A stretch of DNA of 63,671 bases, counting the filler, from Octopus bimaculoides (Eukaryota), in the NCBI RefSeq assembly GCF_001194135.2. It is 5 parts of 4 records of this genome, joined end to end, with 100 filler letters (N's around TTAATTAATTAA, not from the genome) between each part and the next. Parts side by side here need not be neighbours in the genome. Positions count along the whole stretch, not along the records: positions 21,576 to 32,264 come from NC_068982.1; 4 more parts are not named here. One strand, given 5' to 3'. Every line of letters begins with the position of its first letter. Position 1 is the first letter of the stretch. This document shows positions 16,096 through 38,999 of this stretch, piece by piece. The translations under genes were made by a program, and so were the position numbers. The notes under the pieces were generated by a model. That model was not told the origin of the DNA. It searched no databases and saw only the letters and a list, made by a program, of their open reading frames with translations.

Positions 16096-16422
16096 CATAT
16101 ATATATATATATATATATANNNNNNNNNNNNNNNNNNNNNNNNNNNNNNNNNNNNNNNNNNNNNNNNNNNNNNNNNNNNNNNNNNNNNNNNNNNNNNNNN
16201 NNNNNNNNNNNNNNNNNNNNNNNNNNNNNNNNNNNNNNNNNNNNNNNNNNNNNNNNNNNNNNNNNNNNNNNNNNNNNNNNNNNNNNNNNNNNNNNNNNNN
16301 NNNNNNNNNNNNNNNNNNNNNNNNNNNNNNNNNNNNNNNNNNNNNNNNNNNNNNNNNNNNNNNNNNNNNNNNNNNNNNNNNNNNNNNNNNNNNNNNNNNN
16401 NNNNNNNNNNNNNNNNNNNNNN

Positions 16423-17307
16423 AGTTATTTGGCATGATAGATTAAATGCTTTGGTTGAACAAAATCCGAGAAAAATGGTTCGAAAACTTTCATCAGAACT
16501 CCAAACATCTTGCACAACTGTTTTTGGACACCTGTAAAAAATTGGAAAAGTCAAGAAAATAGATAGGTTTATTCTATATCAACTGAATGAGATAAAAAAA
16601 AACAGACGCCTCGAAGTTTCCTCCTTATTGCATTCTCGACTGGAAAAAGACCATTTCTACACGAAATCATTACTTGTGATGGGAAATGTATACTCTGTGA
16701 CAACAGCAGGAGAACAAACAGGACAGTGATTAGATGCAGGAGAGTCACCTAAACACTACCAAAGCCCATCTTTGCACCCTAAAAAGTTAGTGGTCACTGT
16801 ATGGTGGTCTGCGAAGGGAGTTATTCATTATTCATTATGCAACAAGGAAAATAAAATAGCAGCAACATCGTATTGCCAGGAAATCGATCGTATGCTTGAG
16901 AATTTGAAAAAGAAACAACCCAGACTGGTGAAGAATGATGGCCCAACGACAATGCACGTCCTCACACTCCTCAAGCTACGGTCCAAAAGTTGCAAAGCCT
17001 GAATTATGAGATTTTACAGCATCCTCCCTATTCTCCCGATATCTCTTCTACTGATCATCAATTATTTAAGCATTTTAAGCAATAAAACATTCTTAAACAG
17101 AGAAGAGGTAGTTGAAGCATTCGGACAGTTTATTACAACAAAAGATGATTTTTTTTTTAAAGATGGAATATATGACATAGAGAAACGCTGGGTAAACGTC
17201 ATAAATAGCCAGCGATCATGCTTTACTTAAATAAATCAGTTCTCTAACACTTCTGAAACATCTTATTGTTACCTTTCAAATTCAACATTTCGTGTAAAAC
17301 AGCCTAA
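16423..17307 (+). mobile_element. Mariner (DD34D) transposon remnant, transposase pseudogene, 5' end in gap
   Basis: Degenerate motifs EIITCDGKCILCDN (cf. ITGDEKW), HPKKLVVTVWW, NDNARPHT, YSPDISSTDHQLF (cf. YSPDLAPSD), DGIYDIEKRWVNVINSQ. Ends CAGCCTAA followed by TA. Confidence 0.9.
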
Positions 17308-17689
17308 TATATATATATATATATATATAACATATAAATATATATATATATATGTGTGCATATTTGTAAATGAGTTAACATGTGCTTAACAAAAATTGTA
17401 AATCCCAATATTACTGAAAGACATAATTACATTTGCTATATTACACAATCATGGAATACTCACACATATTACTAGGAATTTCCTAGCAATCCAAAGGCAT
17501 GCAATGATCAAATTTCTAAAATGGCAACCATGACATGTGCCACCATGTAGCAACAGTTGTGTGAAGCTGTTACAGGATGACCTGTGGCACATATATTAAA
17601 TACTGATTATGTATTGGATAACTTCATACCTGTGGCTTGCTGGGAGATTCTGTGTATTTTATGTGAATGCTTCATGTATGCAGAATATT

Positions 17690-19895: not shown

Positions 19896-20022
19896 CAGGG
19901 TGTCCACAAGGTCTGGGTATATGGAGTAAATAAAATCATAACATAAACAATTGAATATATGAAATAATAATTTCTTAAAGTATGTGTTAATCCCCATATA
20001 CCCAGACTTTATGGACACCCTG
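19896..20022. mobile_element. 127-bp Tc1/mariner-type MITE in a (TA)n tract
   Basis: ~29-bp TIRs CAGGGTGTCCACAAGGTCTGGGTATATGG / CCATATACCCAGACTTTATGGACACCCTG (2 mismatches), flanked by TA. Confidence 0.85.
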
Positions 20023-20929
20023 TATATATATATATATATAATATATGAGTATATGCATATATATGTACATGTATGTATATACCTTCATCGACATGTACAT
20101 ATAGATACATAACTGGGTACATGACGTGGCAAAAGAACATGGACAAAATGGTAAACAAGGTGCAACAAACAAGCAGGCCACATAAAAACATCTCGTTCAT
20201 CAGCTGCCACCATTAAAACCCCGGCGTTTCGAAGAATTAAGGCAGTACGCATCGTTAAAATGGTTATATATATGTGTATATATATATGTGTGTTAATCTG
20301 AAGTTATTTCGAGTGTTGATGCCTGTTTCTGGTTACAGCTAAATGCCATTGCCGATTATATAGCTTGTTTGTTCTATCTGTTCCCTTCCGTCTTCTTGGA
20401 ATCATTCTCGACAGCTCAACAACAACAACAACAACAACAATAACTTCAACCGCATCAACAACAAAATCATTTAAAGAACCTACCACTAAACAAAACAAAA
20501 AGCAAAATGTGAACTGTAACAATAATCACGTCAGCAACAACAAAAATACTGGCACCTCTCGTCCAATAATGATGATATAAGAATGAAGCCATAGTACAAT
20601 GTCTGTTGAAAATATTTCGTTAACAGGGAGCATAAAGAACTGTCTGCTACAAAACTCTAATTTTACAACGTCTTTTTGTTTTTGTTTCTTTTTATTTTGC
20701 AGACAGATTTTTGTTTCATATTTTTTACTCTGTCTTTTCTCTTTCTTTCTCCCTCTTTCTTGTTCGTTAAGTTTATTTTCTTCTGAAATTCTCTGTAGCT
20801 TTCTCCTTCCCTCTATTCTTACAATTTCCCTTTCTCTCTCCTACTTTTCTCTCTCTCACTCATATCTCTTTCTCTTATGTATGTCTTTCTCTCTTTTACT
20901 TCCTTCTCTCTCATACCTCAGCCATTCTC

Positions 20930-21575: not shown

Positions 21576-22680
21576 GCTTTTGTAGAACTCACAGAAATTT
21601 GAATACCAGTTTCTTCCACTGGTTTTACAGTTACTGTGTCTTGTAATGGCATTTCCAATGTCTGCACTGTTATTTCTTTCTCCACCTCTTCTTCACCTGT
21701 TGTATATGTCTGTTCAGTCTTTATAACCATTGGTACCTGATCTTCAGACGTGACTTTCTTAGAGTCAATTGATACTACCATTTCCACAGGAATATCACTA
21801 ATTTTCTCTGGAGAAATCTCAGTCTTCCGTTCCTCAGTGCTTGTAGTTATAATTGAGGTAACTTTAGCAGTTTCAACTTTCTCTGGTATAATAGTCTGAG
21901 ATACATCTGTAAGTTGAATTTCAGAAACAGGTTTCACTTCTTCTTCTGGTTGTTTCTCCTTCATTACAGCAGTAGAAATTGCTGTAATATCAGTAATTTG
22001 TGGTTTCTTCTCTTTAATTTCCATTTCTTTAGCTTCAATCTGAATTGTACTTTCTGGCACAATATCGAATGTAGAAACTTCTGGTATAACTTCAGTTTCT
22101 TCTTTGCTAATGATAATTTCTCTTGTATCAATAGTGATTGGTTGTTTTTCTATAGAAATAACCTCAGGTACTTGAGGTGCAAACTGCATTTGAATTTCAC
22201 TGACTGCTTTTTCTGGTTTACCAATATCAATGGAGATAACTTCTGTTTTCTCAACAGGTTTAGCACCAATATCAAGTTGGATAGACATTTCCTCTTTAGG
22301 TTCTGGTTTAATATCAACCTCTGTCTTTGCTTTACTAGTTACTTGTATGTCTATTTTTTTATCAGGAATACTTTCAATGATTGTTGGTCCCGTCGTTATT
22401 TGTTCCCTGTGAGAAATATAAACTTCATCTGATTTTACGATTTCTTTTTCAACATCTTTTTGTTCTATGGTATGTTCAAGTACTTTTGTTTCATATGTAC
22501 TAGGTTCAACTACAACTGAAGCTGTTTGGATATCCATTTCAATGCTTTTAGGTGTTTCAAATGAGGGTGAACTTTCTTTTAATTCTGCAACTTCCTGTAC
22601 CACCGTCTTTGGTATTTCTTTAGTCCTTTCTTCTTCTTCTACCACTATTTCTTTTATTTCTGTATGAACTGGCATATCAC
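21576..22680 (-). CDS. Large downstream exon (3' end lost in gap) of the same giant acidic repeat protein
   Basis: Acceptor ttatttgatttatattAG|GTGATATG (AG at 22682-22681), phase 1, giving ...EDI-G-DMPVHTEIKE. Frame open ~1.1 kb into the gap. Same composition as the 31-32 kb exon and carries one near-identical copy of its 46-aa repeat (KTEVDIKPEPKEEMSIQLDIGAKPVEKTEVISIDIGKPEK). Confidence 0.85.
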
Positions 22681-23779
22681 CTAATATAAATCAAATAATT
22701 TTTAAGAAAAACATTTTTACATAGTAATTATTGTTTTGTCTCCATGTTTATTCATCCTGCTTTGACTTAACATAAAAAATTTATTATTATTATTTATTTA
22801 TAATTGGTGTAGTAAATGAGAGAAATGAAATCAGTAACATCAACTCCATAGCATATTTGTTATCTATACAGGTTTTCAATGAATAACTCTAAGAGTAGAT
22901 AATACTCGTACAGTATGCTGGTGTAAATGATTATTGCTATAAAATTTTGTATTTTCATTTGTTTTTGCTAAATACTGAATGAGTGAGGCTGCAAACAATT
23001 TTTACATAACTTAGTGTGTTTGTGCATAGGCTGTTGATAACTTAATATGTAGAATCACTTTAATTGGCATGTTAATGGCAGCATCAATTAAATTTATTAT
23101 CTTTTTACCTACTGCTTATTACTCTCCCAACTATCACTCAACTCTCTCTCTCTCTTAATCATTGTACTGTGGCTGGTACTGGTACTGTCTATATTCAGTT
23201 CCCCCACCAATCACAGTTTATCATCCTACCTGTATGTTTTCATGTGTAACAAGTCATTATTAGCAACCATTTTCTCTTCCCCACATCATCTTTCAATGAC
23301 ACTTACACTAAACACTCTCGTTTACCATCATTTACTCCCTTTCTTAAATATTAATCATCATCTCTTACTATCACCCATTGTTATACTTCAGCCTTTCTCT
23401 CTCACTTTCTCACACATATACACATACACACACATACACATTGCCCCTCTACTATAGCACTTTGTTGATATAGATTATTCTCTTTTATATAACTCTCCCT
23501 CACTTCAAGTATTTCTTCCATTAGTTTGTCCTAACATGTAGTCACTTATGACTGTCTCTTTTCCATTACTTCCATCCATACCACACTATTCACTCTGTTT
23601 AAAATCATTGCATGCAAACACATACTCATATATTATCTTCTGGTTATTCTGTTGTTTATGTGTCTTGGACAACAGGACAAGAGAGGATTATTTTGTCTTG
23701 CAAAGGACAAGGCATTCTCACTTGAGTGTAAAGTTATTGGCAAATGAACAGAGACAATAGCAAAGAGAGCAAAACAATC

Positions 23780-24008
23780 TTCTCTACTACTGGTGCCTCG
23801 ATAAAATACATTCAGTACTCTTGCTAAAGAGGCTGGTGTTAGGAAAGGTATCCAGCCTTTGACGCTATGTAAAATTAAATGTACAAGCAAGACATGGTCT
23901 CCTGAACCATCTGAGAAAGCAGTAACTCAAATAATGGAATCTAGCTGTGTCCAGGACAACTCATCTAACCCATACCATCATAGAAAAAAGATGTAAAATG
24001 ATGATGAA
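23780..24008 (+). mobile_element. RTE-like LINE/SINE 3' tail ending in (TGA)n
   Basis: GGTGTTAGGAAAGGTATCCAGCC...CTAACCCATACCATCATAG...AAATGATGATGA; same tail as at 3121-3260 and 6200-6320. Confidence 0.6.
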
Positions 24009-24629
24009 CATGTAATGTGCAACTGAGAATGTTCCTAACTGTAATTTACAAGGATTTTTTGAATGCAGGATTATGATTTGATAGTATGCATGTATGTATG
24101 TATGTATGTATGTATATAAAGGTGTGTGTGTGTGTGTGTGTGTGTGTGTCTGGTGTGATTGGATGTCATATAAAAACTATATTCATATAAAAACTAGATG
24201 TAGATACTAATATTGGAACATTATCATATAAATGATTACCATACATATATTGTAAGTTAGTTTCTACATTAATTTATACATCTTTCAATTTTGGTAAGGA
24301 ATACCATGTATATCTAAATGTTTAAATGAATATAATATAACTACAGATGAAATCAATATCAAATGCACCAATTAGAGAGAGCAGATATTGAAATTGGTTT
24401 GGCCATAAGGAGAGTATTACTGAAATGCTGAAAATATGTGACAAATTAAGATGTACACTAGTCCCTTGCATAGTTAGTCAGGTTATATAATGTGCTGAGG
24501 CATAACAGTATCATTGTTAACTACTACAAGGACAAAGGAAACGTAAAAATAAACAGTTATAGTTATGCCAAATTGATGTACAAGGCTATGAAAGAAATAG
24601 GCAATACACCTAATCATGAAAGTAAATGA

Positions 24630-25330
24630 TTAGGAAGAGAGTCAGTTTAGACGAGAAGCAGTTTTGGTTTGTACTGGGATGGAATACCGCAGGTACTCTC
24701 TTCTTAATGAGACATTTACAGCAAAATTTCTTATGTGAGAGTAAGCTGCTATACCTAGCACTTAGAAGAAAGTCTTTGAAAGGATATCACACTATGTAGC
24801 CTAGTGATCACTAAGAAAATTAGGTGTAAATAAATGGCTTGTGAGGACTGTGCAAGCCATGAACAGAAATGCCAAATTGTGAGTTAGAAATGAATTTGAT
24901 AAGAAATTTATTGTGCATGTAAATATCCATGAGTCATCAGTGCTTGGTTTCAGCCTACTCTTGTTTATTATACTTCTATAAACCATAAGGAAGGAGTTTA
25001 AGAGCAGCTGCCTAAGAGAACTTCTGCATACCAATAAGCTAGTTCTTAGTGATGTTGTTAAAGAATTAGAGAAGAAATCCCAACCATAGAAGCAGAATCT
25101 AAATTTGTGAGGTATCACAGGTAAGAAGGCAGGTTTCTATTGCTATCAGAGAGGTAACCATGCTCAATAGGCAGAAAAGGAGTGGATAGGGACTCTGTAG
25201 TTTGCACAAAATGTAAACTATAAATGCACAAGAGATGTTGTGGAATTATTGGAAGACTAACTGAGCAGATTTGGTATGTAGGAGATTCTAAGAAGTTTTT
25301 AACAGTAAGTCTCTTGTGAAAAAAATTTTA
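24630..25330 (+). mobile_element. RTE-clade LINE reverse transcriptase remnant, antisense to the host gene intron
   Basis: Degenerate translation SLRKLGVNKWLVRTVQAM...VRNEF...VNIH...LLFIIL..TIRKEFKSSCLRELLH..KLVL..KELEKK matches the RTE RT pattern (RKLGVxEWLVRAVQAMY; GCPWELLYADDL) with stops and indels. Confidence 0.75.
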
Positions 25331-26226
25331 CAGATGCTAGACAAGCTTCAGAAGCAGTTCATAGTGTTTGTTATCTAGGAGACTTTAATAAGATACAAAT
25401 TGTCTGACTTTTCATAATCAGATATAGTCATCAATGTTTGGTCAGTTACACTGGTTTTAGACAAAGAAAGAAAAGATTATGAGTGTAGTATAATTAAAAT
25501 AAAAGCTAAATTTGGGTTCCTGAACATTTCAAAATTGCATTTTCATCCTTAATTTACAGGTATTTTATCATAGACAAGACTGTAAGGCCCAAATTTAAAA
25601 TATAGACCAGTAAATGTGACAAATTATATATTGGTCTAAATAATTTACTTACTATTTAAACAATTATGATTAAAATACTACTGGTTTTAAAAAATCAAAA
25701 ATATAGACTTTGAAAATAAATATATATTGCATAATAACCAACAATGGTAGTGACTGAAAAGAAAACAACGTTGTTTGAGTGAGTGTACATGGTGATTAAA
25801 ATAAAACAAATATTAAAATCTAAATAAAAAAGTTGTTTACATCATACCTGATTTCCACAAATTTTAAATAGAAAGTAGAAATTATATGGAAACATACCTG
25901 AGTTGAAGATAACTAAATTATGATGTTGGTGAATATTCAGATGAATTTTTTTTAAATTTAAATATATACTTCCTGTATTGGTAAACTGGCATATTCTATT
26001 TTATGTCCACCATACATACACATATACGTGCATGAGCATATATATATGTATATATATATATATNNNNNNNNNNNNNNNNNNNNNNNNNNNNNNNNNNNNN
26101 NNNNATATATAACCCACACTTATATATTGTAAGAACTATTATATTAAAGTGCTGTAAAATACACATTTTGATTATGTAGGCTTGTCTCGTTATACAATAA
26201 CATGAAATCCATCATAAAATGTGTTT

Positions 26227-26270
26227 TCTTACCTGTAAAGAGAAATATAAAAGAGCAGTGTCAGATATGT
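26227..26270 (-). other. Abutting 3' and 5' splice-site consensus (candidate recursive splice site)
   Basis: CTGAC-actgctcttttatatttctctttacAG|GTAAGA; AG at 26234-26233, GT at 26232-26231. Confidence 0.5.
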
Positions 26271-29200
26271 ATTTGAACCATATAGGATAAATAAACCAAC
26301 ATACAAGAGAATAAATTACAGCAAATATATATACAATGTAGGTACCATAAAATATAAAATTTGAGGAAAAACAACATAAGCTTTAAATTTTGACAGGATA
26401 AATAAAGTCTAACTTTAATAAAGAGATTTTTACCACAATGGAGGGTAATATTTTGTAAATAATTAAATAAATAGATTGATAAATAAATATTCTGCAATCA
26501 TATTTGTCACTAATGATACACTAAAGTATTGGCTGATTGTCATGTATATAATTTAGTTTTCCAGTAGATGATACAAGAAACATAGTTTTTGTGTATTGTA
26601 TTTTATAATAATGTAATTGTATATTCTAATTATCTGGAACTGATTTCAGTCTTTTTTAATTATTTCACTTTATTTGTGTAGGGACAAGAAAACATCAGAA
26701 AGGTGTGACTAGCTGCTTTTCTAAAAAATTATTATATAAATGAAATTACACCAACTAAGAATGAAAAAGAGGATATACACTATGATTGTGAGAAAATCAC
26801 TACCATATGAAAATATGACCATTCAGTAATTTTTAAATATTTGTAATGACATTTTATTAAGAATAAAATAAAGACTCTAATAACATAATTTTAACTACGA
26901 AACAATTGTTGACATTTGTGAGATGTTCAATGACACACAACTATATCAACAAAAAAGCCAGCTGATAGTTGATATGTAGACTTTTACTAAACGACACACT
27001 GCTATGACTAGATCACTTCTGAACCATGCTCTTCCTCTCTTTCTCTCTCTCTCTCTCTCTTCTAGTGTAACCAAAAATTCTACCTTTTGGAATTGCTGAT
27101 TGTGAACCTACTACCATCTAACTTTCCTCTCCATATGACTGTATCCAATCCTCTAAGTATACTTCCATAACATTCTTTTTCAGAACTCTACCTGTAGAAT
27201 TTAATGCCTTGAATGTCTTTGCTACCTTGAAGTCAAATTAATCAGCAACAAGTGATTGTCATATATCCAAATTCCATATTAACCAGCCTAACTTGACCCA
27301 ACTATCCCTCTCCTTTACTGCCAAATTGGCCGTAAAAAGACTGGACACTGTCTTTCTTACTCAAAAGAAATTGAATTAAAATAAATAAGAGGTTTATAAA
27401 AAAATACTATAAATCTGAATGAGAAAAAAATTCATATCAATAAATTATATACTGAAATATTTGAATGATAGCAAAAAATTTCTAATTTTTACTTTTAAAC
27501 CAAGTGTGGGCAAAGATACAAATCATATATAAAAAAGGATGGGAAATGCATATCTGAAGAGAAGACATTTAAATTGAAACAGATTTTGTTATTCTTATAT
27601 TTGAAATAAAATTTGCCCCAAAATTTACAAAAATAAATACTATTTGCAACCACTTTGAAGGAAAATGTAGAAACATTGCAAGATAATATGGACCCAGTTT
27701 TCTACAATATGAATATGCTACAATATGAATAATCATTTCTAAATATGTGACTTTTGACAAGACATGTATTTTTCAAACATACAGCAATGAACAACTATAA
27801 TTCCCAAACTAGATGCTTACAAGAAAAACAATTCTTCTGTTCTTAAACTAAACTTGTACAAATATTCCTACTTCTGATGATGTAGTAATTAACAATTTTC
27901 CTGTATGTAAATATCTAAAATGAATTTTAGAACAAAATAAAATCCAGATTTCAAAAACTCAATCTGCACTCTTATATTGCTTTCCATTTTCCTCCCTTCC
28001 AAAATTAAAACTATTTATTTGCTTTTAAAATTCATACAAAATATTTTAGCCATAAGTAGATAGCCTAACATTTTCTCACAAAAAGAAGTTCTGAGACAAA
28101 TATTTCTAAAGTGAATTTTAATTTTCAGAAATTCAGTAATTATTTATCACTTTGCTAAAAGATGGTAATAATTGATCAAAACTTGATAATATCTTCATCT
28201 ATACAACTTCAAAAGTAAAGAAGGAATGGAATAAATATTTGTAAGCACAATGAAAAAAATAAAAGATATAATAGCATAAGACTGCAACACTAAATTCTAT
28301 AACATAATTACTGAGGACTGAGAATTATTGAAAACTATACTGAAGTATATGGTAAAATAGTAAATAAAATTAGGATGTAAAGAAATATTGATTTCTGAGT
28401 ATTGTTTCATCTGATGATACAAAATTTTCATTTGATTGCAATCCAAGAATTTAAAGAATTTTTGCTCATTCTAACTACCATTTCTAAGTAATGTTATTAG
28501 TGATGTCCCTCAGTTTGTAAATCAAAGAATAATACAAGTACAATTGTGATATAGGAATTACACATTTTTTTTAAAAGTAAGTATACACAGTTGAAAAATT
28601 AGATTCTGTATTAAAACTTCAGTTCCATTTTGATACTGATAAATAATTTAGTTTGTCTCTATGATAGCATTAATGGGCAATTCCTATATTAAAATACTTT
28701 TAAAAAAGAAAGGCACCTACATACTAGTTTAGATACTTCTTTCTAAATTAACTAATGGAATCATAGCAAACATTTGAATTGTATTTTTAGAAATCTGCCA
28801 AAGTACAATTATTGCAAAGCTGCTCATAGTGAAGCACACTAAAAGACAATGCTACAATAAATCATTTAAGTGAGACAGAGTTATGGCTGCCAAACAACAA
28901 ATACAATACAAAACAAGAAACAAAATAGTACCATTTAGCAAATATGGACAGTTTACATAAAATTTTTGAATATTTGTTTCACACAAGATAGATAACAATA
29001 TGTAAACCATGGAAAGCTCTTCAGCTGAGAATAAGCAACAAAATAGATACAAACGTGATCTTAAATGCTGATTTTTAAAGCACACATTAATTTTCAATTG
29101 TGTAGGAAAATTAATTCTAAATAATGTCTTTTTAAATTGTAATTTAAATTAAAATTGTGATCAGTTGAAATGGTAATAATAAAATCTAAAATTCAAAAGA

Positions 29201-29844
29201 TCTAAATACTTAAATAAGGATTTGTTACAAAGGTCATGAAATTTAGGAGAGGATATCATCAGTTATATCAACCTCAGCACATGACAGAAGATCAATTTAT
29301 CAACTTCAAGTGGATGAACAGTATAGTAAACTTAATAAGATTTGGACTTAAATGTAAATGCTGCAAAGCATTTAAACCTTGACTCCACTATTTCAGACAC
29401 TTACCACTCTCAATATAATTAAACAAAACCTATTATTGATCCAATAATACTATTAATTCAATAAATCCAATTTCTAAAACTATTTTTATAAAATTTCATT
29501 ATACAAGAAAGTATGATCTAAGTAAGAAATATATTAATTCACAAAAGTTTTATTAAATTTGAAAAATTTTTCTATAAATCTAACATTAACCAGATAAAAT
29601 AACTTGCAATTAAATATTAATCTGAGTTTCCAAAATGATTAACAATATTATAAAAAGATACACTACATGAATTTATTTTCATAAAAAATCTCATTGAATG
29701 TTCATTTTAAATACTTTTCCTTTGAGAAATAGCTAGTGTAAATAATCTATTATTTATTTAAAACAATTATTTTTTTCATAATATCAAATGTAATATTTTT
29801 ATGTTTCAGTGTTGCATATATAAATATAATATAATGGCTGAAAA

Positions 29845-30200
29845 TTTTGGCACAAGGCCAGAATTTTAGTGGGGTGAGTTTATTACATCAACCCTAGTAG
29901 AAAATTGGTGCTTATTTTATTGACAGCAAAAAGATGGAAGGCAATGTCAACCTCAGTGGAATATGAACATAGAGCTGGAGAAAATGCTACTTAGATTTGG
30001 ACTTAAATATAAATGCTGCAAGGAATTTAGACCCTGACTCTACTATTTCAGACACTTACCACCCTCAAGATAATTAAATAAAACCTATTATTGACCCAAT
30101 GATACTATTAATTCTATAAATCCAATTTTTAAAAATATTTTTACAAAATTTCATTATACAAGAAAGTCCAATGTGCTAATGATTCTGCCAGCTCACCACC
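29845..30200 (-). mobile_element. Old SINE family B copy interrupted by a duplicated local segment
   Basis: Body at 29845-29990 and head (GTGCTAATGATTCTGCCAGCTCACCACC on +) at 30172-30200; CpG sites of the consensus appear as TG/CA. Confidence 0.7.
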
Positions 30201-31081
30201 ATTTTATACATGTAAATATAATTCAAAGAAAGTTTTCTAAATTTATGCATGAACATTCCAAACACAAAATTTTAACTAAGTTATGCTAAGTTGTATATTA
30301 AAACTTTTCCTTAGTGAATAAAACAATTAAGATAACATTAAAATAAAATTATGTAGTAATTGGCATAAAATACTTATTATTTTATTTCCTTTAAATTATA
30401 TACAAAATAATAGTAATAATGTGGAAAAACTGAGACATATAAAAATGTAGAATTACTACGGATATAAAGATTGTGGCTATCTAAATTCATAGTTATGCAC
30501 AAAATGCAAGTATAAGGGCTTCTTTTCCATGCAAATGTTTGAACTGAAACATTCTAATCTATGATAAACTAATAAATCATAACCTAACTAATTCTAAATA
30601 TCATATGGCATTTATTAAATATTTTAGATATTCGAGGATATTTTAATACTATATATCTTAAAATAATCCTACGGCTAAAAAGCAGATATGATGAATTTAG
30701 TTTTATATTCAATATACATTTAGCAAAGCAAAAGTGTACAGATTGATTACTTACTATGTAAAATTATTATAAATACCTAAGCAAAGCAACATGCATCTAT
30801 ATGAAAATACGATGAAAGCATTTTCTTTTTATACAGACAGTTATACTCTTTAGATATGAGAAATAACAGAGACCCAACAAAACTATTGACAAATTATTGA
30901 GCTGAAAGAGACATAAAAACAAATACACTGGTTAAGTACATTAAAACACATCTAAATACACATTTAACAGCATGCTACCGAGGCATTGGTAAGCTACAGA
31001 TATTGATGCTTGTGTAAATTCAAGCAGTAGCAGCAAGTGCAGTAGCATAAATTAAATCCCGGATAATGCTCCGCAAAATAC

Positions 31082-32264
31082 CTATATCTTCCACAACTTC
31101 TTCTTTAAATAACTGAAGATCTTCAGGACCAGAAAGGCTACTTTTTGATTCAATCAATACATCTCCTTCATGAATTAAGCTTGGCACAATGGATTTCACA
31201 GCAGAAGCTTCATCATATATATTCAGACTTTGAAGCTCTGGACTGTACAATTCTGATGAAACAATTTCTTCAATGGCAGACTTTGCATCAGTGGATATAT
31301 CAATAACTTCAGATGGAGCACAAACTACATCACTAATATCAATTTTAGATGTCTCAGGCTTACCAATTTCAATGGTTGTAACTTCTGTTTTCTCAACAGG
31401 TTTATCACCAATGCCGAATTGGATAGATATTTCCTCTTTAGTTTCTGGTTTAATATCAACTTCTGTCTTTTCAATTTCAGTAACAACTTTCTCTGGTTTA
31501 CCAATTTCAATGGTTGTAACTTCTGTTTTCTCAACAGGTTTAGCACCAATATCAAGTTGGATAGACATTTCTTCTTTAGTTTCTGGTTTAATATCAACCT
31601 CTGTCTTTTCAATTTCAGTGACAACTTTCTCTGGTTTACCAATATCAATGGAGATAACTTCTGTTTTCTCAACGGGTTTAGCACCAATGTCAAGTTGGAT
31701 AGACATTTCTTCTTTAGTTTCTGGTTTAATATCAACCTCTGACTTTTCAATTTCAGTGACAACTTTCTCTGGTTTACCAATTTCAATGGTTGTAACTTCT
31801 GTTTTCTCAACAGGTTTAGCACCAATGTCAAGTTGGATAGACATTTCCTCTTTAGTTTCTGGTTTAATATCAACTTCTGTCTTCTCAACAGGTTCCTTTG
31901 AAACTACTTCTTTGTGTACAATTTCAGAAGGAATTGTCTCTTGAATTGTAATCGTTTGCAGATCAGTGCTAACAACAGCTGCAGACATAGGTATCTCCAC
32001 ATGTTCTTTCTCTATATCAGTTATATGTTCAATAGTATCAACTAACACATCTTCTGCTGTGCGAATCTCATCACGTACACTAACTGATGTGTCTTTTTCT
32101 TCATCAGAAACTTCTTTAGTTTCCACTTTCTTTTCTTCAGTTGATGGAATATCAAAGAATTCTTCTTCAGAAAGTTCTTCTTCAGCTGTACTCACAACAC
32201 TCACTGATGGAGCACTTATAATGGTCATTTCAGAGATACCTTTCACTTCTTTAGTCACAGGAAT
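31082..32264 (-). CDS. Large internal exon (5' end lost in gap) of an unidentified giant acidic E/V/T/I/K-rich repeat protein; contains ~3.7 tandem 46-aa repeats
   Basis: Stop-free frame from the gap edge (ATT CCT GTG..., IPVTKEVKG...) over ~1.2 kb of otherwise stop-rich AT DNA, with coherent biased composition. Candidate donor ATAG|GTATTT (GT at 31081-31080) is phase 1, matching the acceptor at 22682-22681. Without splicing the frame ends at TGA 31022-31020. Confidence 0.85.
31370..31890 (-). repeat. Coding tandem repeat, 138-bp (46-aa) period, ~3.7 copies
   Basis: Anchor GTTTCTGGTTTAATATCAAC recurs at 31441, 31579, 31717 and 31855 (spacing 138). Unit EKTEVDIKPETKEEMSIQLDIGAKPVEKTEVTTIEIGKPEKVVTEI. 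Confidence 0.95.
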
Positions 32265-32730
32265 NNNNNNNNNNNNNNNNNNNNNNNNNNNNNNNNNNNN
32301 NNNNNNNNTTAATTAATTAANNNNNNNNNNNNNNNNNNNNNNNNNNNNNNNNNNNNNNNNNNNNATATATATATATATATATACATATATATATGAAACG
32401 TTTATGTCGTGAAAAACCACTCCCATGATTTTTAATACAGAATTCTTTTGACCGAACACTAATAATATCACTTGAATGCTATACTGATGATAACATGATC
32501 AATTTTGATGCCATGTCTCAGACGCGAAACCAACAAACCTTACCCATAACACTGTGTCACTCATTATGCCATTCCATTCTACCCTTATTTGTGCATTTCT
32601 CATACTTTTCTGCACAATTTCTGACTGTCATTGCCTGAAACGTCTTCACAATGGTCTTTACTGATCCATCGAATGCCATTGCACAAATGCTTTTTTCTTC
32701 AATTTGATCGAAATCTTGTGACATGTCTGG

Positions 32731-32731
32731 C

Positions 32732-32810
<79 letters not shown>

Positions 32811-32865
32811 CTTGTGTTTGTGTCTGCTTATCTCTCTCACNNNNNNNNNNNNNNNNNNNNNNNNN

Positions 32866-32930
<65 letters not shown>
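32731..32930. repeat. (TATC)n and (AG)n microsatellites flanking a small gap
   Basis: Directly visible. Confidence 0.95.
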
Positions 32931-32935
<5 letters not shown>

Positions 32936-34680
32936 TCAGAGTTATCACCAAGGAGATAAACAATGGTAATGTGATATCCAGACGGAGCCTTAGGTAGCAA
33001 GGGTTGTAGTGAGTAGGGTTAATGATGGAAGAAAGTCTGCATAAGGGAAGAGTTAGAGGAAGTGAAAAGACAAACACGTATATTTATATATTATGCTTAT
33101 ATGAATTATTTTAACGTGCCTACAGGTGTACTTGTTTGGCTTTATGATAAAGTTTCTTGTTTATCATTACATGTTATCGAATTTACTCGTTTGCTGGATT
33201 TAATTACACCAATTTAGGAAATTTAAAATTCCGGGATTTTAACCAATCTTTCTCCAAGTGATCACAGGCTTTCATCACGAGCTTCAGTCAGTGGCTTTGA
33301 TCACGAGCTTCGATCACTGGCTTTGGAATGTTAAAAACATATCTATGTTCATTATCACAAGTCTAATGACAGAAACATTATTGTTATTTTCCCTGACATT
33401 CGATTCATATGAATAAAATGATTTTGCGCAATAGTTGAAATGGAAGTCAGCATATATGCTCACGGTTGTACCTTCGAAATAAGTCTCCTCCATCAGAATT
33501 ATGTATAATCTGTAATTATCGGAAAGGAATACGCTGTTGTTTAGAAGTGTGTATTTAAACCAAGAAAGATTTGAACTATTATAAGATTACAGGTTATAGG
33601 GAAATCCGATGAATCCGTAAACAATGCCTAATGAAGTAGCGGGTTGTCAACTTATTCATGAATGAATAATTGTTTAAAGCAAAATAATTTATCATTTGTA
33701 TATGTACAAATGAAACTGGATGGAGGAATAAACACCGACATCGTTCGTTCTCTCGTTTGTTTACAATGTATGAGAGTAATGCATCATTTCTGTTTATATT
33801 CATGAACCCGTGTGCGAAAATAAGTGTGAAATACTTTTGCAAATGTTGCTGCTAAACAGATAATATATCTTACAATACCAAACTTTCCATATAACACAAC
33901 CCACACCAGATCAATGGAAAGAGTTCCATTATCAAACAATATTCTATTGTTAAATTAATTACGATTAGAATAACTGTTAAATACAAGATACTGAAATTGT
34001 ATGTTATATTTAATGCATATAGCATTAACATTTAAAGTAATATATTTATAAGTAGTTTAGACGACAAACGAAGAAAAAGTAGGAATAGTTCCATCTTCCA
34101 GAAAAATACGTAAGACAATTACGCATTTATTCCATTTATTTTCAACTTCATTTGCGTAAGATATTCACCAAGAAGAGAAATTAAGATTCATATTTAATGA
34201 AGAAATTAAAATAAATTATATATTTCAGACGTAGAAACATGTAAATCTGTAGACATTGAATGAGGCTCTGACGTCATTCCTATTAACTCAGCGAAATGTT
34301 AACGAGTTTTCTAAACAAAATGGACATTACAAGACTATTTAATAGTAGATATATTTTGTATGAAAACAATATTTGTCCAAAACTAATATTAATTATTCTA
34401 CTTCATTATTTAAACTATAACATTAATTATACACACTTAGTACTGTTCTTTACACGGTCACGTGTTCAGAGTACTGGATTGAAATGAATTTCCTTTTTCT
34501 CTCACTTTTACCATTTTAACTTACACTAAAATAAATTTAGCGTTTTATGCATAAAATATTATTGATACAACATTAATTTGAAATGTATTCCAATTTTGTT
34601 ATGTTATATTGCTCAAGTTTAGAAAGATTTACGTATATTGTGTCTTATATCGTATATGTTCATAATATAATCTTAAGATT

Positions 34681-34772
34681 CTTTTCTACTCTACACACAA
34701 GGCACAAGGCCCGAAATTTTAGGGGAGGGAGCCAGTCGATCAGATCGACCCCACTATTCAACTGGTACTTAA
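34681..34772 (-). mobile_element. SINE family B 3' fragment
   Basis: Reverse complement of the 3' half of the 59134 copy. Confidence 0.8.
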
Positions 34773-35207
34773 GATTACAATGAAATTTTTCTTATTCTAT
34801 TTCTATGGTCAACGCATAAGAGACGCAATGATTCATGAGGGAAAGATTTGATCAGTTACCGTAGTCGCAATATAAACCTACTTCTTCTTAATTAAACGAC
34901 ATCTTTGATGTTGTAAACGTACAGGTTGTAAATCGTGAGACAAGTAATGAGTGTAAAAGATGTTAGGGACCTGATATTCTAGGTAGGCTGTAACAAGTAT
35001 ATCCACTACAGCAAGGAACGATAGTTTTATAAAGAGAAATAGGCAAACAGGAGACATAGCTCGTTTTGGAGTGAGGAATTAGATGTCATATGAAGTGAAG
35101 CTAGACGAGACTGGTAATATAGAATTTCTATCCAGCGGAGTTTATGGTATGTTACTCTTTTAGGTGTTTTGTACAATGTTTGGGAATTTCTTCTGGAACG
35201 GATAATT

Positions 35208-35271
<64 letters not shown>

Positions 35272-35810
35272 CACACATATATATATATGTGTGTGTGTGT
35301 ATGTATGTGTGTGTATGTGTGTGTGTGAATGTGTGTGTTTAGTGCCATGGGATATATACATGTACAATCGGGCTGTGCCTTAATGGTCCTAATGGCAGCC
35401 ATTTATTGGTACATGAGATATATATAAAAAATAAGAGAAAATGATGGACGTTCATAGGTTATGAAACCGGTTAATATAGCTTGCTTGTATGTTTTACACG
35501 GCATGGGTAAGCGTGGGTTGTAGACGTACATTATTTATTTCTATCATAAAAGAATGGATTGTACATTTGTATAGTTATATGTGGTTAATTTATAAAATTC
35601 TTACTGCTTAGAAATTAACTACATGTGCATAAATTGTGTGGATTTAAAGAACATTCTGTCGGTTACATGCAAATAATAATCCTCTGTGAATGTTGTGTAG
35701 TTCCGTCCAAGATTATCACTCATATAAATACGTACCATTTGAGAAACAGTAATAAGTTGCATCCTTGTAGCGACATAGCCAGTTCTGGTAATGAATACCA
35801 ATTTATCAAT

Positions 35811-36125
35811 TGTGGCTTAGTGGTTAGGGCATTCGGCTCACGATCGTAAGGTCGTGAGTTCAATTCCCTGCGACGCATTGTGGCTGTGAGCAAGACACTT
35901 TATTTTGCGTTGCTCCAGTTTACTCAGCTGGCAAACATGAGTAGTACCTGCATTTCAAAGGGCCGGCTTTGTCACGCAATGTGTCACGCTGAATCTCCCT
36001 GAGAACTACGTTAGGGGTACACGTGTCTATGGATTGCTCAGTCACTTGCACGTTAATTTCACGACCAAGCTGTTACTTTGATCGTATCAGCTGGGACCCT
36101 CGTCGTCGCAACCGACGGAGTACTC
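35811..36125 (+). mobile_element. tRNA-derived SINE family C (subtype 2: different head and middle, same 3' tail)
   Basis: TGGCTTAGTGG...GAGTTCAATTCC head, GAGCAAGACACTTTATT middle, tail shared with the 8670 and 61248 copies. Confidence 0.85.
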
Positions 36126-38999
36126 CGTCAATTGTGAGTAGGAGAATAATGAGAGCAGCATGTTTCAATGGAGCAACACGAATGAAATTCAATTCATGAT
36201 AGACAAGAAACATTTCCACAAGAAATGCGTGCAAAATTTTGTGAACGGCGAGAAAACGGTTAGCTACGTTGATATCTTTTTCGATAAGCATCTGAAAGAG
36301 TAGCAAACCATATCGCCTTTGGTTTCAACGGTGAAATTTTGGTTGAACATCCAGTGAATTATTTTGACATTCAAATTGTATCTAAATGGCTGAACGTTAC
36401 AAGAAGTGTGCACCGCACACGTCAGTTCTAGACAGATTCAATATGATGTTTTCGGGCTGTACCGTTGAAACATTTGTACGACAACCCGATGGGATTATCT
36501 GCAGTTTCTATTTGTCCAGTTTAATTCATCTTGCTGGGTCTTACTGGAGCCCAAACGTAAGGCAACAGTCCAAGAAATCATGAAGTTGTAGCAAACGTAG
36601 GGACTTGTGATCGGAAACTGATGTCAAATACTTAAACATTCTATATCCATGTAGATTATTTATTGTTGAATTACATGGAAGATATCCTACACAAGAAAAC
36701 GTAATTGTTAACCATTCTTCCCATCAATTTCAGATGTTAGGATTAAGAAGACATGTATCCTTAGTTGAAAATCTCACAGATGTTTCCTACTTGCTGAAAT
36801 ACCAGTCGTTCAGCAAAGCATATTGGCGTATCATGCAAGGGAGTTACTTTCATTTACAACGTTAAGACTACAGGGATTACGATAAATTTAGTGATATTCA
36901 TATTTTCAACTTAACGCTGGCGTCAACTATAGAAAGATGCGCTCTGCTATCATGAATATAATTACAACAATCACAGACCCGTATTTGGTTCAATATCAAA
37001 TATTAATGCTGCAAGTTTTCTATGAGTGTGGTTTAGAGGCTAAAACTAATAAATAAGCCAACAAAATAGAGACACAATAGTCTACACATTCATTATAATG
37101 ATGTCATTGTTGATTTTGCTCATATTTCTTTGGGGAAACAGTTACTGATAGCACAGGAAATATTGTTAGTTGTTAGAATACTTGTAACAGTGACAATTTA
37201 AAACATCAATTAGCATAACTTTGAGAAAAACAGTCAACAAAGATATAATTTTTTTTTTTTTTTTGAAAAAATATTGGTTTTGAAGTTTTAAATAAATATC
37301 TGCAAACAAAAACTCAAAGTATGTTTGAAATTCATAAAATCGTCGTATAATAAAGACTGACTTGAAACGAAGTGTCTGTGTGAAGTTGAAATAAAAAGCA
37401 AATATATGCAAAGCAATGAGAAACAAGATGTATATTAGCAAAATTTTAGCAATAAATAAAAAGGGAATTAAATTTGCAGACGAAATAATGTTATGTGTGA
37501 TACGCTAAAACTGATAATGTCCTATGCAATAAACTAGTACAGAACAACACAGAGGGACACCGAACTGCGATTAAACAGGCACTTTCACGATTATATATAT
37601 ATATATATATATATATATAAGCAAAAAGGATATTCAAAGTTAATGCAGAGCAATCTTCAGCTTCACAAAGATATAGAAATTTAATGAAATTAAATTTAAA
37701 CAGGACATATTTTTATAGTGAAATTTAAACTCACCAAGTAGAAAAGAAGAAGAAAAAAAACAGTTTTACTTAGCCAGACCATACAGTAAATAGTTGATTT
37801 TGCAGATGCAACATTAGTAAAAAATAGACTTAGGTTGTAATGGAAATTAACATTTCACCGGAAGTTGTACTAGAAGATGAATAATCATGTTAAGCTATAT
37901 ACTCGTTGATATTTTAGACTTAAAACTGAAATTTATTATTCTATAATCTTTTGTAAAACGATCGTTTTGAAGTGTTAATCTCCGATTAGTAGTATAATTT
38001 TTTTTAGATTGTGGCACCTATCCAGATAACGCAAAATATACTGCCTGTAGAGACTTCAGTTCTACTTGCTGGATGCTGGTCTTCAGCTGGGCAGTGCTAT
38101 GATGGATAATTAGAAATCATTTCATTATATGTAACATCGTTAAATGAAAATAGAGAAGTAATAAATTGCCTGTTATATGCGCAAGTTAAGTTACTTGGGA
38201 TCGACTGCAATTGTCTGAAATGCTGAAGTTGCTATAGATATGATATCACATGAAGAATTTATAATTACGCAACAAGATTCCCAGTAATTTTATGAGCATC
38301 ACACCAGTGAAGAAAATAAAGTGTGGAGCCCGTGTTCCTTTAAACAATTTTCTATCGCAATGTACACAGAAAATTCTGTGTTGCCCTGGATTTGATCATA
38401 CTGATATACATCTAACTCATTTACCGTTTGAATGATATTCGCGAGATTTTTTATATTTTCATGAATTTCGTATTAACAATGCCTGAAACATTAGCATGAT
38501 CGTGACATATCCTGTATGATCATACGTGTATGTGTGGAAATATGCATTGAAAATACTACTTAGTTTTTGCTTTGTTTCAACTTCCGTATGTTTATTTATA
38601 AACATATGTGTTTTTTGAAATTGCATACAATACCAAAAAGTTTGCAGGTTACAGCACATTTTTTTTCTTTTCTATTTAGGATTTTATACGCTATATGTTA
38701 TAGTTTAGTGTTATCCATTTTCTTTCGGTTTAAAAAAAAGTTTGACCAAACACAGTTTTTAAACAGTAGGAATTCAATGCTTGAACTACGTATGATAAAT
38801 GATTTGCATATATAATTGTGTAATATAAAGTGTTAAGTATATGTTGGACTTGATATTTTTAAAAGCTTTATTCTTCTAGAACTTAATTTAATTTTTGCCA
38901 GAATAACATTTTTATTACTGTATGATATTGTAATGTGCAGCCGAGTTTAAATTCCTTTTGAAGTTGTTATATCAACAATAACATTTTGACGCAGGTATG

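What the first reader, a model, noticed from the sequence alone, without database searches (positions are those of the whole stretch)
21576..32264. Fragment of a giant, intrinsically disordered acidic repeat protein encoded by kb-sized exons
Seen: about 760 codons in two exons joined in frame by a phase-1 GT-AG intron (31081-22681). The sequence is rich in E, V, T, I, K, S and P, lacks Trp, has little aromatic content, and shows no recognisable enzyme domain. Established: giant low-complexity repeat exons occur in titin/sallimus-like proteins, nesprin/Msp300, spectraplakins, giant ankyrins and MAP1B/Futsch. Inference: this is a lineage-specific spacer or elastic region of one such cytoskeletal giant. 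I cannot say which, and the 46-aa repeat is not one I recognise.
Basis: partly seen in the sequence, partly recalled or inferred. Interest (0 to 1): 0.7.

Follow-up and report, generated by a model that had tools for sequence, protein, structure and literature searches.

The report
Cephalopod giant acidic super-repeat protein fragment
This piece holds the ends of two very large exons of a real gene, so far seen only in cephalopods, that encodes thousands of residues of acidic, repetitive and probably unfolded protein; in cuttlefish this region sits directly upstream of muscle-type immunoglobulin domains, so it is most likely a new kind of spacer or spring in a titin-like giant.

Summary
On the minus strand, two stop-free frames (32264-31082 and 22680-21576, both cut by the piece's edges) join in phase 1 across a GT-AG intron (31081-22681). 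The joined protein is 762 residues: E 18%, I 13%, V 11%, K 10%, T 10%, no Trp. A 138-nt (46-aa) repeat is present 3.9 times, plus one copy in the second exon. The N gap lies in an (AT)n microsatellite deep in the intron and does not affect the frame.

An exhaustive search of 1.84 billion proteins found relatives only in cephalopods: Argonauta hians (4426 aa, "hypothetical") and Sepia pharaonis (1135 aa, "unnamed"). The Argonauta locus carries at least four giant exons of the same material, two of them cut by the locus ends. The window's donor (DIG|GTATTT) recurs at all three Argonauta donors and its acceptor (TATTAG|GT, once TACTAG|GT) at all three acceptors. The two complete exons are multiples of three.

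dN/dS against Argonauta is 0.35-0.53. There is no Pfam or PDB match, and AlphaFold mean pLDDT is 32.

In Sepia the repeat exon ends 3.7 kb upstream of disulphide-less I-set Ig exons and an IQ motif, on the same strand and in a compatible phase. "Cytoskeletal Ig giant" is therefore favoured, but which one is unresolved and no RNA evidence could be obtained.

Two extras: an invariant LSEEEFFDIPS-type motif occurs once per super-repeat, and a ~210-nt intron block is conserved from octopods to cuttlefish.

The parts
31082..32264 (-). 3' part of a giant exon (394 codons plus 1 base). It is cut by the piece edge at 32264 and ends ...FKEEVVEDIG at the donor.
   Evidence: Open frame. 75-78% nucleotide identity to 13 copies in A. 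hians L001. dN/dS 0.45-0.53.
32142..32174 (-). Acidic di-Phe motif LSEEEFFDIPS, one per super-repeat. It resembles an FFAT or LIR motif.
   Evidence: A copy of LS[DE]EEFF.[IV][PL]S is present in all 13 A. hians and all 12 Sepia super-repeats; one A. hians copy has H for D and two Sepia copies have L for P. It is the best-conserved block in the window-Sepia alignment.
31332..31883 (-). Tandem array of four 46-aa (138-nt) units, KTEVDIKPETKEEMSIQLDIGAKPVEKTEVTTIEIGKPEKVVTEIE. The last unit is degenerate at its end.
   Evidence: TRF period 138, 3.9 copies, 93%. Copy coordinates, and pN/pS 0-0.38 among the complete copies.
31080..31082 (-). Phase-1 splice donor G|GT, in the context GATATAG|GTATTT.
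   Evidence: The identical context occurs at all three A. hians donors and nearly so in Sepia (CTAG|GTATTT). The A. hians gene model places its intron here.
30850..31079 (-). Conserved non-coding block at the 5' end of the intron. It holds a branch-point-like TTAAC, a pyrimidine tract and TTTCAG|C about 178 nt after the donor.
   Evidence: It aligns with three A. hians introns (66-70% identity) and with the Sepia intron (71.6% over 208 nt; score 41 against shuffles -36 +/- 7). The reading frame is not conserved, and there is no consensus RNA structure.
22681..31081 (-). Inferred intron of 8401 nt. It contains microsatellites and a 180-nt two-copy repeat, and no coding-like frame.
   Evidence: Its ORFs have no Pfam hit and there is no Rfam hit. 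Only its two ends align to A. hians.
26064..26104 (.). Assembly gap inside an (AT)n microsatellite within the intron.
22681..22755 (-). Conserved 3' end of the intron with the phase-1 acceptor TATTTGATTTATATTAG|GT.
   Evidence: The same motif occurs before all three A. hians exon starts and before the Sepia giant exon.
21576..22680 (-). 5' part of the next giant exon (2 bases plus 367 codons). It begins (G)DMPVHTEIKE and is cut by the piece edge at 21576.
   Evidence: Open frame. 70-76% nucleotide identity to A. hians copies. dN/dS 0.35-0.40. 29% protein identity to the Sepia unit, collinear over 370 residues.
22190..22327 (-). Single further copy of the 46-aa unit in the second exon.

Best explanation
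The piece contains the tail of one giant exon and the head of the next, separated by an 8.4-kb phase-1 GT-AG intron. The gene is known so far only from coleoid cephalopods.

The gene encodes many thousands of residues of a highly acidic super-repeat rich in Glu, Ile, Val, Lys and Thr, with a net charge of about -0.12 to -0.16 per residue. The super-repeat period is about 400-1000 residues. Each super-repeat carries three things: a few collinear conserved blocks, one near-invariant acidic di-Phe motif (LS[DE]EEFF.[IV]PS), and a short tandem array whose unit and copy number differ between lineages (46 aa in this genome, 38 aa in Argonauta).

Most likely mechanism (inferred): the region is an unfolded or only weakly structured polyanionic spacer or entropic spring inside an intracellular immunoglobulin-domain filament protein of the titin / obscurin / MLCK class. 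Its length would be tunable in two ways: by super-repeat number, and by inclusion or skipping of whole giant exons, which are all phase 1-1 and multiples of three. The regularly spaced di-Phe motifs would dock a partner protein.

Shown here: coding status, purifying selection, repeat architecture, conserved splice sites and their flanks, restriction to cephalopods among the sequences searched, and adjacency to Ig exons in Sepia.

Inferred only: that the repeat and the Ig exons share one transcript in this species, disorder, spring or spacer function, alternative exon use, and partner docking.
For: 1. Coding status. Open frames of 414 and 371 codons compare with at most 161 in shuffles. The window's own repeat copies differ mainly at synonymous sites. 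dN/dS against A. hians is 0.35-0.53 with dS 0.43-0.69.

2. Relatives. An exhaustive phmmer search of 1.84e9 representative proteins gave only A. hians GAB1610542.1 (E = 0, 27 matched stretches), Sepia CAE1290795.1 (1.8e-32) and one weak snail hit.

3. Giant size and exon structure. A. hians locus L001 has open frames at 1-4200, 9908-17536, 22746-28502 and 32152-38505. Each of the three exon starts reads FILG(D/N/E).P and each of the three exon ends reads DIG|GTAT. The two complete exons are 7614 and 5742 nt.

4. Composition is conserved even at 30% identity.

5. No Pfam or PDB relative was found. AlphaFold gave mean pLDDT 32 and pTM 0.23. Hydrophobic residues are dispersed: adjacent hydrophobic pairs are depleted, z = -4.6.

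6. Link to Ig domains. In Sepia locus L002 the repeat exon ends ...GPKDVQSLKEDNLG|GTATTT. It is followed on the same strand by a called gene that starts inside the repeat exon and carries I-set/Ig_3 and IQ hits. I read two I-set exons and an IQ exon there. The acceptor of the first Ig exon is phase 1. These Ig domains lack the canonical Cys pair, and their best PDB match is titin Ig (5e-34).

7. The di-Phe motif is present once in every super-repeat of all three taxa.
Against: - The junction and any exon skipping are therefore predictions.
- The link to Ig domains rests on one species (Sepia), on a gene prediction, and on phase compatibility, which has a one-in-three chance level. The 38.5-kb Argonauta locus shows no Ig exon.
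- Pro is only 6%, and P+E+V+K sum to 46%. The segment is therefore not a PEVK segment by composition.
- Mean hydropathy is 0.455 against a disorder boundary of 0.458, which is borderline. AlphaFold without an alignment is a weak test of disorder.
- The Sepia region contains frameshifts. They are 1-2-nt changes, almost all in runs of A, relative to 97%-identical intact copies, which points to assembly error.
Confidence: 0.55

Rival explanations
1. It is specifically the PEVK-equivalent elastic segment of the cephalopod titin/connectin (sallimus) orthologue and is expressed in muscle.
For: Ig exons of the titin-like, disulphide-less I-set type lie downstream in Sepia, and their best PDB hits are titin I-band Igs. 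Established knowledge: invertebrate titins carry lineage-specific elastic repeats in large exons, such as crayfish I-connectin SEK/PEVK, C. elegans TTN-1 PEVT and Drosophila Sls PEVK. This background was recalled, not tested here.
Against: I-set Ig domains are generic, and Robo, DSCAM and MyBP-C score nearly as well. An IQ motif follows the Igs, which is not a titin or sallimus feature as far as I know. The composition is not PEVK. No sequence similarity to any titin segment appeared in the exhaustive search.
Confidence: 0.2
2. It is a stand-alone, cephalopod-specific orphan gene that encodes only the acidic repeat. It would be cytoplasmic or neuronal, for example a MAP-like or scaffold protein. 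The Sepia Ig gene would be merely a neighbour that was fused by gene prediction.
For: The A. hians and Sepia models P0001 and P0002 contain nothing but repeat. No Ig exon lies within 38.5 kb in A. hians. A conserved block after each donor contains early stops and a TATAAA-like signal, so it could be a terminal 3' UTR.
Against: Every giant exon seen starts and ends in phase 1 at conserved splice sites and has no conserved start or stop, so each looks like an internal exon. The Sepia exon can splice in frame to the Ig exon 3.7 kb downstream. The Sepia gene model starts in the repeat and carries Ig hits.
Confidence: 0.2
3. It is a secreted or extracellular acidic matrix protein, of the mucin or biomineralisation type.
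For: Acidic repetitive proteins with phase 1-1 exons are common in extracellular matrices, and the segment is rich in Ser and Thr.
Against: No signal peptide or Cys-rich module was seen. Asn is almost absent, at one residue in 762. The acidity comes from Glu rather than Asp. The neighbouring Ig domains lack the disulphide pair and are followed by a calmodulin-type IQ motif, both intracellular features.
Confidence: 0.04
4. It is not a gene: the open frames are a by-product of a purine-rich satellite or of a transposon.
For: Several frames, including antisense ones, are open across the repeats.
Against: The sense frame is far longer than any other: 414 and 371 codons here, and up to 2543 in A. 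hians. dN/dS is below 1. Homology to Sepia is collinear at the protein level. Splice sites are conserved. There is no transposon domain.
Confidence: 0.01

Closest known systems
Titin PEVK segment and its invertebrate counterparts (Drosophila Sallimus PEVK, C. elegans TTN-1 PEVT, crayfish I-connectin SEK/PEVK)
   Same: It is a very long, low-complexity, Glu/Val/Lys-rich and Trp-free region built from short tandem modules. It evolves fast but under compositional constraint. It is encoded by symmetric exons, and in Sepia it lies next to disulphide-less I-set Ig domains.
   Different: Pro is 6% rather than 20-30%. Ile and Thr are major components. The net charge is strongly negative. The region is organised as 400-1000-residue super-repeats with conserved blocks and an invariant di-Phe motif. 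Its exons are 5-15 kb rather than mostly about 80-nt PEVK exons. There is no detectable sequence similarity.
Obscurin / UNC-89 and Stretchin-MLCK type Ig giants with disordered inserts
   Same: These are intracellular Ig proteins with long unstructured repeat regions (the UNC-89 KSP region, stretchin repeats). Vertebrate obscurin has an IQ motif between Ig domains, and an IQ exon follows the Sepia Ig exons.
   Different: No SH3, DH-PH, FN3 or kinase exon was within reach to test. The Pfam IQ hit in the gene model is 'faint'. The repeat sequences are unrelated.
FFAT motif (EFFDAxE in an acidic tract; binds the MSP domain of VAP proteins; PMC8306308)
   Same: The window's motif is EEELSEEE-EFFDIPS. 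Core positions 1-4 (E-F-F-D) match, and there is an acidic flank upstream. The motif lies in a probably unstructured region, is conserved across species, and recurs once per super-repeat.
   Different: Position 5 is Ile or Val instead of Ala, and position 7 is Ser instead of Glu. The position-weight score could not be computed because the matrix was not available. FFDI/FFEV also fits the [WFY]xx[LIV] core of an LC3-interacting region. No binding has been tested.

Membership tests
Titin/sallimus-type PEVK elastic segment | Composition dominated by Pro, Glu, Val and Lys | tested here: not met
   P 6.2, E 18.0, V 11.3 and K 10.4 % sum to 46%. Ile (13%) and Thr (10%) are major components instead.
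Titin/sallimus-type PEVK elastic segment | Lies in one polypeptide with tandem intracellular I-set Ig (and FN3, kinase) domains | tested here: inconclusive
   In Sepia L002, I-set exons lie 3.7 kb downstream on the same strand with a phase-1 acceptor. The called gene starts in the repeat exon and carries Ig hits. None lies within 38.5 kb in A. hians. This cannot be tested inside the window piece.
Titin/sallimus-type PEVK elastic segment | Lack of stable tertiary structure (entropic spring) | tested here: inconclusive
   AlphaFold single-sequence mean pLDDT is 32 and no residue reaches 70. There is no PDB or Pfam match. Charge-hydropathy is borderline, 0.455 against 0.458.
Titin/sallimus-type PEVK elastic segment | Sequence homology to known PEVK/PPAK/poly-E modules | tested here: not met
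   The exhaustive phmmer search returned only two cephalopod proteins and one weak snail hit.
Titin/sallimus-type PEVK elastic segment | Expression in muscle and sarcomeric location | not testable with these tools
Obscurin/UNC-89 | Ig arrays with an IQ motif, SH3-DH-PH and kinase domains | tested here: inconclusive
   An IQ-like exon (AATKIQAAFRGFKV) follows two Ig domains in Sepia. The rest of that gene lies beyond the fetched locus.
Nesprin / spectraplakin / giant ankyrin / MAP1B-Futsch giant exons | Flanking spectrin/CH/KASH, ANK/ZU5/death or MAP1 domains | tested here: not met
   No such domain was found in the proteins or in the loci within reach. The only neighbouring domains are Ig and IQ.
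FFAT motif | Core EFFDAxE with an upstream acidic tract, in a cytosolic unstructured region, conserved across species | tested here: inconclusive
   The core is EFFDIPS or EFFEVPS, so positions 1-4 and the flank fit and positions 5 and 7 do not. It is present in all 26 copies across three taxa. It was not scored with the published matrix, and binding is untested.
Transposon-encoded protein | RT, integrase, transposase or gag-like domain | tested here: not met
   No Pfam hit in the exons or in the intron ORFs of the window. The only RT is a LINE-like ORF inside an A. hians intron.

The most novel reading that the evidence does not exclude
The protein is not just a passive spring but a giant multivalent docking ladder. 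One invariant acidic di-Phe motif of FFAT or LIR type is displayed every 400-1000 residues along a polyanionic thread. This would tether ER/SR (VAP) or autophagy (ATG8) machinery to an Ig-domain cytoskeletal filament. Isoform length would be set by a deeply conserved ~210-nt intronic element after each giant exon, which controls exon skipping or early termination. The whole arrangement would be a coleoid-cephalopod invention.
Probability: 0.12. Interest if true: 0.75.

Novelty: new variant of a known kind. Interest (0 to 1): 0.5.

Why it matters
Giant repetitive exons are routinely left unannotated or labelled "hypothetical", and both relatives found here are unnamed. This one defines a protein family, so far seen only in cephalopods, with an unusual architecture: 5-15-kb exons that are all phase 1-1, super-repeats of hundreds of residues, and a tandem sub-unit that differs between lineages.

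If the family belongs to a titin- or obscurin-class protein, it would be the cephalopod solution to building a long molecular spacer or spring. That bears on the obliquely striated, hydrostat muscles of these animals. It would also be a natural experiment in which composition, not sequence, is conserved.

The strictly conserved di-Phe motif and the intronic block conserved between octopods and cuttlefish are concrete, testable handles on partner binding and on the splicing control of giant exons.

Tried and rejected
- Word-indexed protein searches found nothing with three queries: the whole protein, the least repetitive 119 residues, and the Sepia Ig/IQ exons. The index evidently lacks these cephalopod entries, so named octopus orthologues could not be retrieved.
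Only the single-sequence model was obtained. I did not run fold search on it, because a pLDDT of 32 would make any match meaningless.
- A PDB profile search with the 29-row alignment found nothing.
- The Bulinus truncatus hit P0003 is a peptidylglycine-monooxygenase-like protein with MSLQLDIIDVSPDPKGR repeats (E = 6.8e-4). I judged it a low-complexity resemblance to MSIQLDIGAKPVEK, not homology.
- The read-through peptide after the donor (GILRSIIRDLIYATALAATA*) looked conserved with one A. hians exon. I rejected it as coding because the two other A. hians introns stop after one codon and Sepia reads the conserved DNA in another frame.
- A conserved RNA structure in that intron block is not supported by RNAalifold (-5.3 kcal/mol, positive covariation term).
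- An FFAT score could not be computed, because the matrix sits in a supplement that is not held.
- No hidden exon or transposon was found in the window intron: there is no coding-like frame, no Pfam hit and no Rfam hit.

Full report
**1. What is in the sequence**

The gene lies on the minus strand. Two long stop-free frames stand out from an otherwise AT-rich stretch full of stop codons. One runs 32264-31023 (414 codons) and the other 22690-21578 (371 codons), and both run off the edges of the piece. Base shuffles of the piece give a longest stop-free run of 96 codons on average and 161 at most. Shuffles with exon composition reach at most 173.

The upstream frame meets a donor G|GT at 31082/31081-31080, in the context GATATAG|GTATTT. 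The downstream frame is entered at an acceptor AG at 22682-22681, in the context TTATATTAG|GT. One base lies before the intron and two after it, which makes GGT (Gly). The join is therefore phase 1 and in frame, and it gives 762 codons.

The composition is E 18.0, I 13.0, V 11.3, K 10.4, T 10.0, S 8.7 and P 6.2 %. There is no Trp, and only one Asn and one Cys.

A 138-nt (46-aa) unit is repeated 3.9 times at 31352-31888 with 93% matches. In register, the copies occupy 31883-31332. A fifth copy lies at 22190-22327 in the second exon. Read directly, the unit is itself three degenerate ~15-aa modules of the form [VLI][DE]I(G)(A)KP[EV]xK.

**2. The assembly gap**

N 26064-26104 lies about 5.0 kb downstream of the donor and 3.4 kb upstream of the acceptor. 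AT-dinucleotide repeat flanks it on both sides. No frame that crosses it has coding-like composition. The gap is intronic, so its unknown length cannot affect the reading frame.

The same arrangement of exon tail, intron and exon head occurs three times, without gaps, in Argonauta.

**3. Is it coding?**

Yes. The complete copies of the window's own 46-aa repeat differ mostly at synonymous sites (pN/pS 0-0.38).

Against the best-matching Argonauta copies, dN/dS is 0.45-0.53 for the head of the first exon and 0.35-0.40 for the second exon, with dS 0.43-0.69. This pattern fits a fast-evolving but constrained protein.

Antisense and off-frame ORFs exist. They are much shorter and follow from the purine-rich sense strand. 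There is no transposon domain. The intron ORFs have no Pfam hit, and the piece has no Rfam hit.

**4. Relatives**

The word-indexed searches found nothing. The exhaustive phmmer search of 1.84 billion representative proteins found three hits:
- P0001, 4426 aa, E = 0, with 27 matched stretches.
- P0002, 1135 aa, E = 1.8e-32.
- P0003, a weak hit at E = 6.8e-4.

P0001 is "hypothetical protein" GAB1610542.1 of the octopod Argonauta hians. P0002 is "unnamed protein product" CAE1290795.1 of the cuttlefish Acanthosepion (Sepia) pharaonis. P0003 is a snail monooxygenase with an unrelated short repeat, which I take as a low-complexity resemblance. Neither cephalopod protein has a Pfam domain above threshold. 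Within what was searched, the family is known only from cephalopods.

**5. Architecture in Argonauta (locus L001)**

The 38.5-kb locus has four giant open frames on one strand: 1-4200 (cut), 9908-17536, 22746-28502 and 32152-38505 (cut). Together they hold about 8,000 codons of the same material.

Each of the three exon starts reads FILG(D/N/E).P, which is TATTAG|GT (TACTAG|GT in one) read through. Each of the three exon ends reads ...DIG|GTAT. These are the same acceptor and donor as in the window.

The deposited gene model joins the two middle exons exactly at DIG|D. The two complete exons are 7614 and 5742 nt. Both are multiples of three and phase 1-1, so any of them could be skipped without breaking the frame.

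The protein is a super-repeat. In P0001 the sequence that ends the window's second exon (...ISVSSTK) runs on, after about 25 residues, into the sequence that begins the window's first exon (...ISEITIISAPSVSVVSTAEE...). The window therefore shows the last super-repeat plus the tail of one exon, and the head plus the first super-repeat of the next.

Thirteen super-repeats lie in L001, spaced 1.2-3.0 kb apart. At the position of the window's 46-aa array, Argonauta has a different tandem unit of 114 nt (38 aa), present 2-3.5 times per super-repeat.

**6. Architecture in Sepia (locus L002)**

About 15 kb (roughly 1197-16311) is one repeat exon. It contains 12 super-repeats of 1218 nt, or 406 aa.

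The frame is broken between about 5.4 and 9.9 kb. The breaks are 1-2-nt length differences, almost all in runs of A, relative to 97%-identical intact copies. That is the signature of long-read assembly error, not of decay.

The window and the Sepia unit align collinearly at 24-29% identity. The conserved blocks are LS[ED]EEFF[DE][IV]PSTE, SDEV.IS..EQI, a ~60-residue block (VETAKVTSIITTS...KTEQTY), and [IL]QISV.S.

Composition is nearly the same in all three taxa. Composition and a few blocks are under selection, while most of the sequence is not.

**7. What the repeat is attached to**

The Sepia repeat exon begins at a phase-1 acceptor, TATTTGATTTGTAATAG|AT. It ends ...GPKDVQSLKEDNLG|GTATTT, which compares with the window's ...SGPEDLQLFKEEVVEDIG|GTATTT.

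A called gene starts inside the repeat exon, at an in-frame Met at 13653, and continues beyond the locus. It carries I-set, Ig_3 and a faint IQ hit.

I read the following exons there:
- A split I-set domain at 19995-20198 plus 20246-20506.
- A second I-set domain at 22309-22653.
- An IQ-type exon (AATKIQAAFRGFKV) at 23139-23252.

Both candidate acceptors of the first Ig exon are phase 1, so the giant exon can splice to it in frame. Both Ig domains lack the canonical B-F cysteine pair, which is typical of intracellular muscle-type Ig. Their best PDB matches are titin I-band Igs (5e-34), although Robo, DSCAM and MyBP-C follow closely.

It does not show which Ig giant this is. The IQ motif would fit an obscurin-like protein better than titin.

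The link rests on one species and on prediction. No Ig exon lies within the Argonauta locus.

**8. Disorder**

There is no Pfam or PDB relative, even with a 29-row profile. AlphaFold without an alignment gave mean pLDDT 32 and pTM 0.23, with no residue above 70 and only low-confidence beta-hairpins in the repeats.

Mean hydropathy is 0.455, and the Uversky boundary for this charge is 0.458, so the sequence sits on the line. Hydrophobic residues are kept apart: adjacent hydrophobic pairs are depleted, z = -4.6.

"Disordered" is therefore likely but not demonstrated. The 24% of beta-branched Ile and Val leaves room for labile beta structure.

**9. Mechanism proposed**

The region is a long polyanionic, largely unfolded thread that acts as a spacer or entropic spring in an intracellular Ig-domain filament protein. 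Its length would be adjustable over evolutionary time through super-repeat and sub-repeat copy number. It may also be adjustable per isoform through skipping of the phase 1-1 giant exons.

The near-invariant acidic di-Phe motif, one per super-repeat in 26 of 26 copies across three taxa, suggests regularly spaced docking of a partner. It matches positions 1-4 and the acidic flank of the FFAT consensus EFFDAxE (PMC8306308), but not positions 5 and 7. It also fits an LIR core. This is a lead, not a result.

**10. An unexpected extra**

The first ~210-300 nt of the intron are conserved. Identity is 66-70% with all three Argonauta introns and 71.6% with the Sepia intron over 208 aligned bases. The alignment score against Sepia is 41, against -36 +/- 7 for shuffles. 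That is better than the last 240 nt of the exons, which score -2. The rest of the intron does not align.

The frame through the block is not conserved, and there is no consensus RNA structure. The block contains an invariant TTAAC, a pyrimidine tract and TTTCAG|C about 178 nt after the donor. After that come early stops and, in the window, one Argonauta intron and Sepia, a conserved AGAA.AATGCTTT block (preceded by TATAAA in the two octopod sequences only).

It could be a splicing-control element for giant-exon definition, or an alternative short terminal exon or polyadenylation unit. It needs RNA data to resolve.

**11. Verdict**

The feature is a new variant of a known kind: a lineage-specific low-complexity spacer in a giant, probably Ig-bearing, cytoskeletal protein. 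Three features are not described for PEVK-type segments: the super-repeat organisation, the invariant di-Phe motif, and the conserved post-donor intron block.

Noticed in passing
window 31081-30779 (minus strand); L001 4138-4440, 17534-17800, 28503-28760; L002 16312-16620: The first ~210-300 nt of the intron after each giant exon are conserved across octopods and cuttlefish. Window versus Sepia is 71.6% identical over 208 nt, better than the adjacent exon. The block has no conserved reading frame and no consensus RNA structure. It contains a branch-point-like TTAAC, a pyrimidine tract and an invariant TTTCAG|C about 178 nt after the donor, followed by an AGAA.AATGCTTT block shared by the window, one A. 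hians intron and Sepia (preceded by TATAAA in the two octopod sequences). It may be an alternative terminal exon or a splicing-control element.
   Followed up: partly
window 32142-32174 (minus strand); 13 sites in L001 and 12 in L002: The motif LS[DE]EEFF.[IV]PS occurs once per super-repeat and is kept, with single substitutions in three copies, in all 26 copies seen in three taxa. It resembles an FFAT motif (EFFDAxE in an acidic tract) or an F-type LIR.
   Followed up: partly
window 31020-31081 (minus strand); L001 4138-4200: Reading through the donor gives GILRSIIRDLIYATALAATA* in the window and GILWNIMQYSLCASALAATA* after one A. hians exon. The two other A. hians introns stop after one codon, and Sepia reads the same DNA in another frame. 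The resemblance is therefore at the nucleotide level and is not a conserved C-terminus.
   Followed up: yes
window 29333-29512 and 29988-30167: Two 180-nt copies, 91% identical and 655 nt apart, lie inside the intron. This is either a local duplication or a short interspersed element. They were not characterised.
   Followed up: no
window 23076-23575, 24084-24157, 27035-27060, 26038-26063: The intron holds several simple-sequence tracts: a strongly C-over-G-skewed stretch (GC skew -0.58) with ACACATAT repeats, (GTAT)8, (GT)18, (CT)13, and the (AT)n tract that borders the assembly gap.
   Followed up: no
L001 7127-9235: A 703-codon ORF with reverse-transcriptase and PHD-finger domains (RVT_1, 4.9e-32) lies in the first A. 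hians intron. It is a retrotransposon insertion in the intron and is not part of the gene.
   Followed up: yes
L002 5300-9950: The Sepia repeat exon has about 20 frameshifts in this stretch. All are 1-2-nt length changes, almost all in runs of A, relative to 97%-identical intact copies. They are probably unpolished long-read assembly errors that split the Sepia gene into several models.
   Followed up: yes
L001 1-4200 and 32152-38505: Two further giant open frames of the same family (1400 and 2118 codons, both cut by the locus ends) flank the annotated A. hians gene and are not in any called gene. The deposited 4426-aa model is therefore a fragment of a much larger gene.
   Followed up: partly
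joined protein (window exons), P0001, P0002: Asn is almost absent (0.1%, 1.2% and 0.2%) although the genomes are AT-rich. Cys, Arg, Tyr and Trp are also rare. This composition is shared by all three taxa even at 30% identity.
   Followed up: partly
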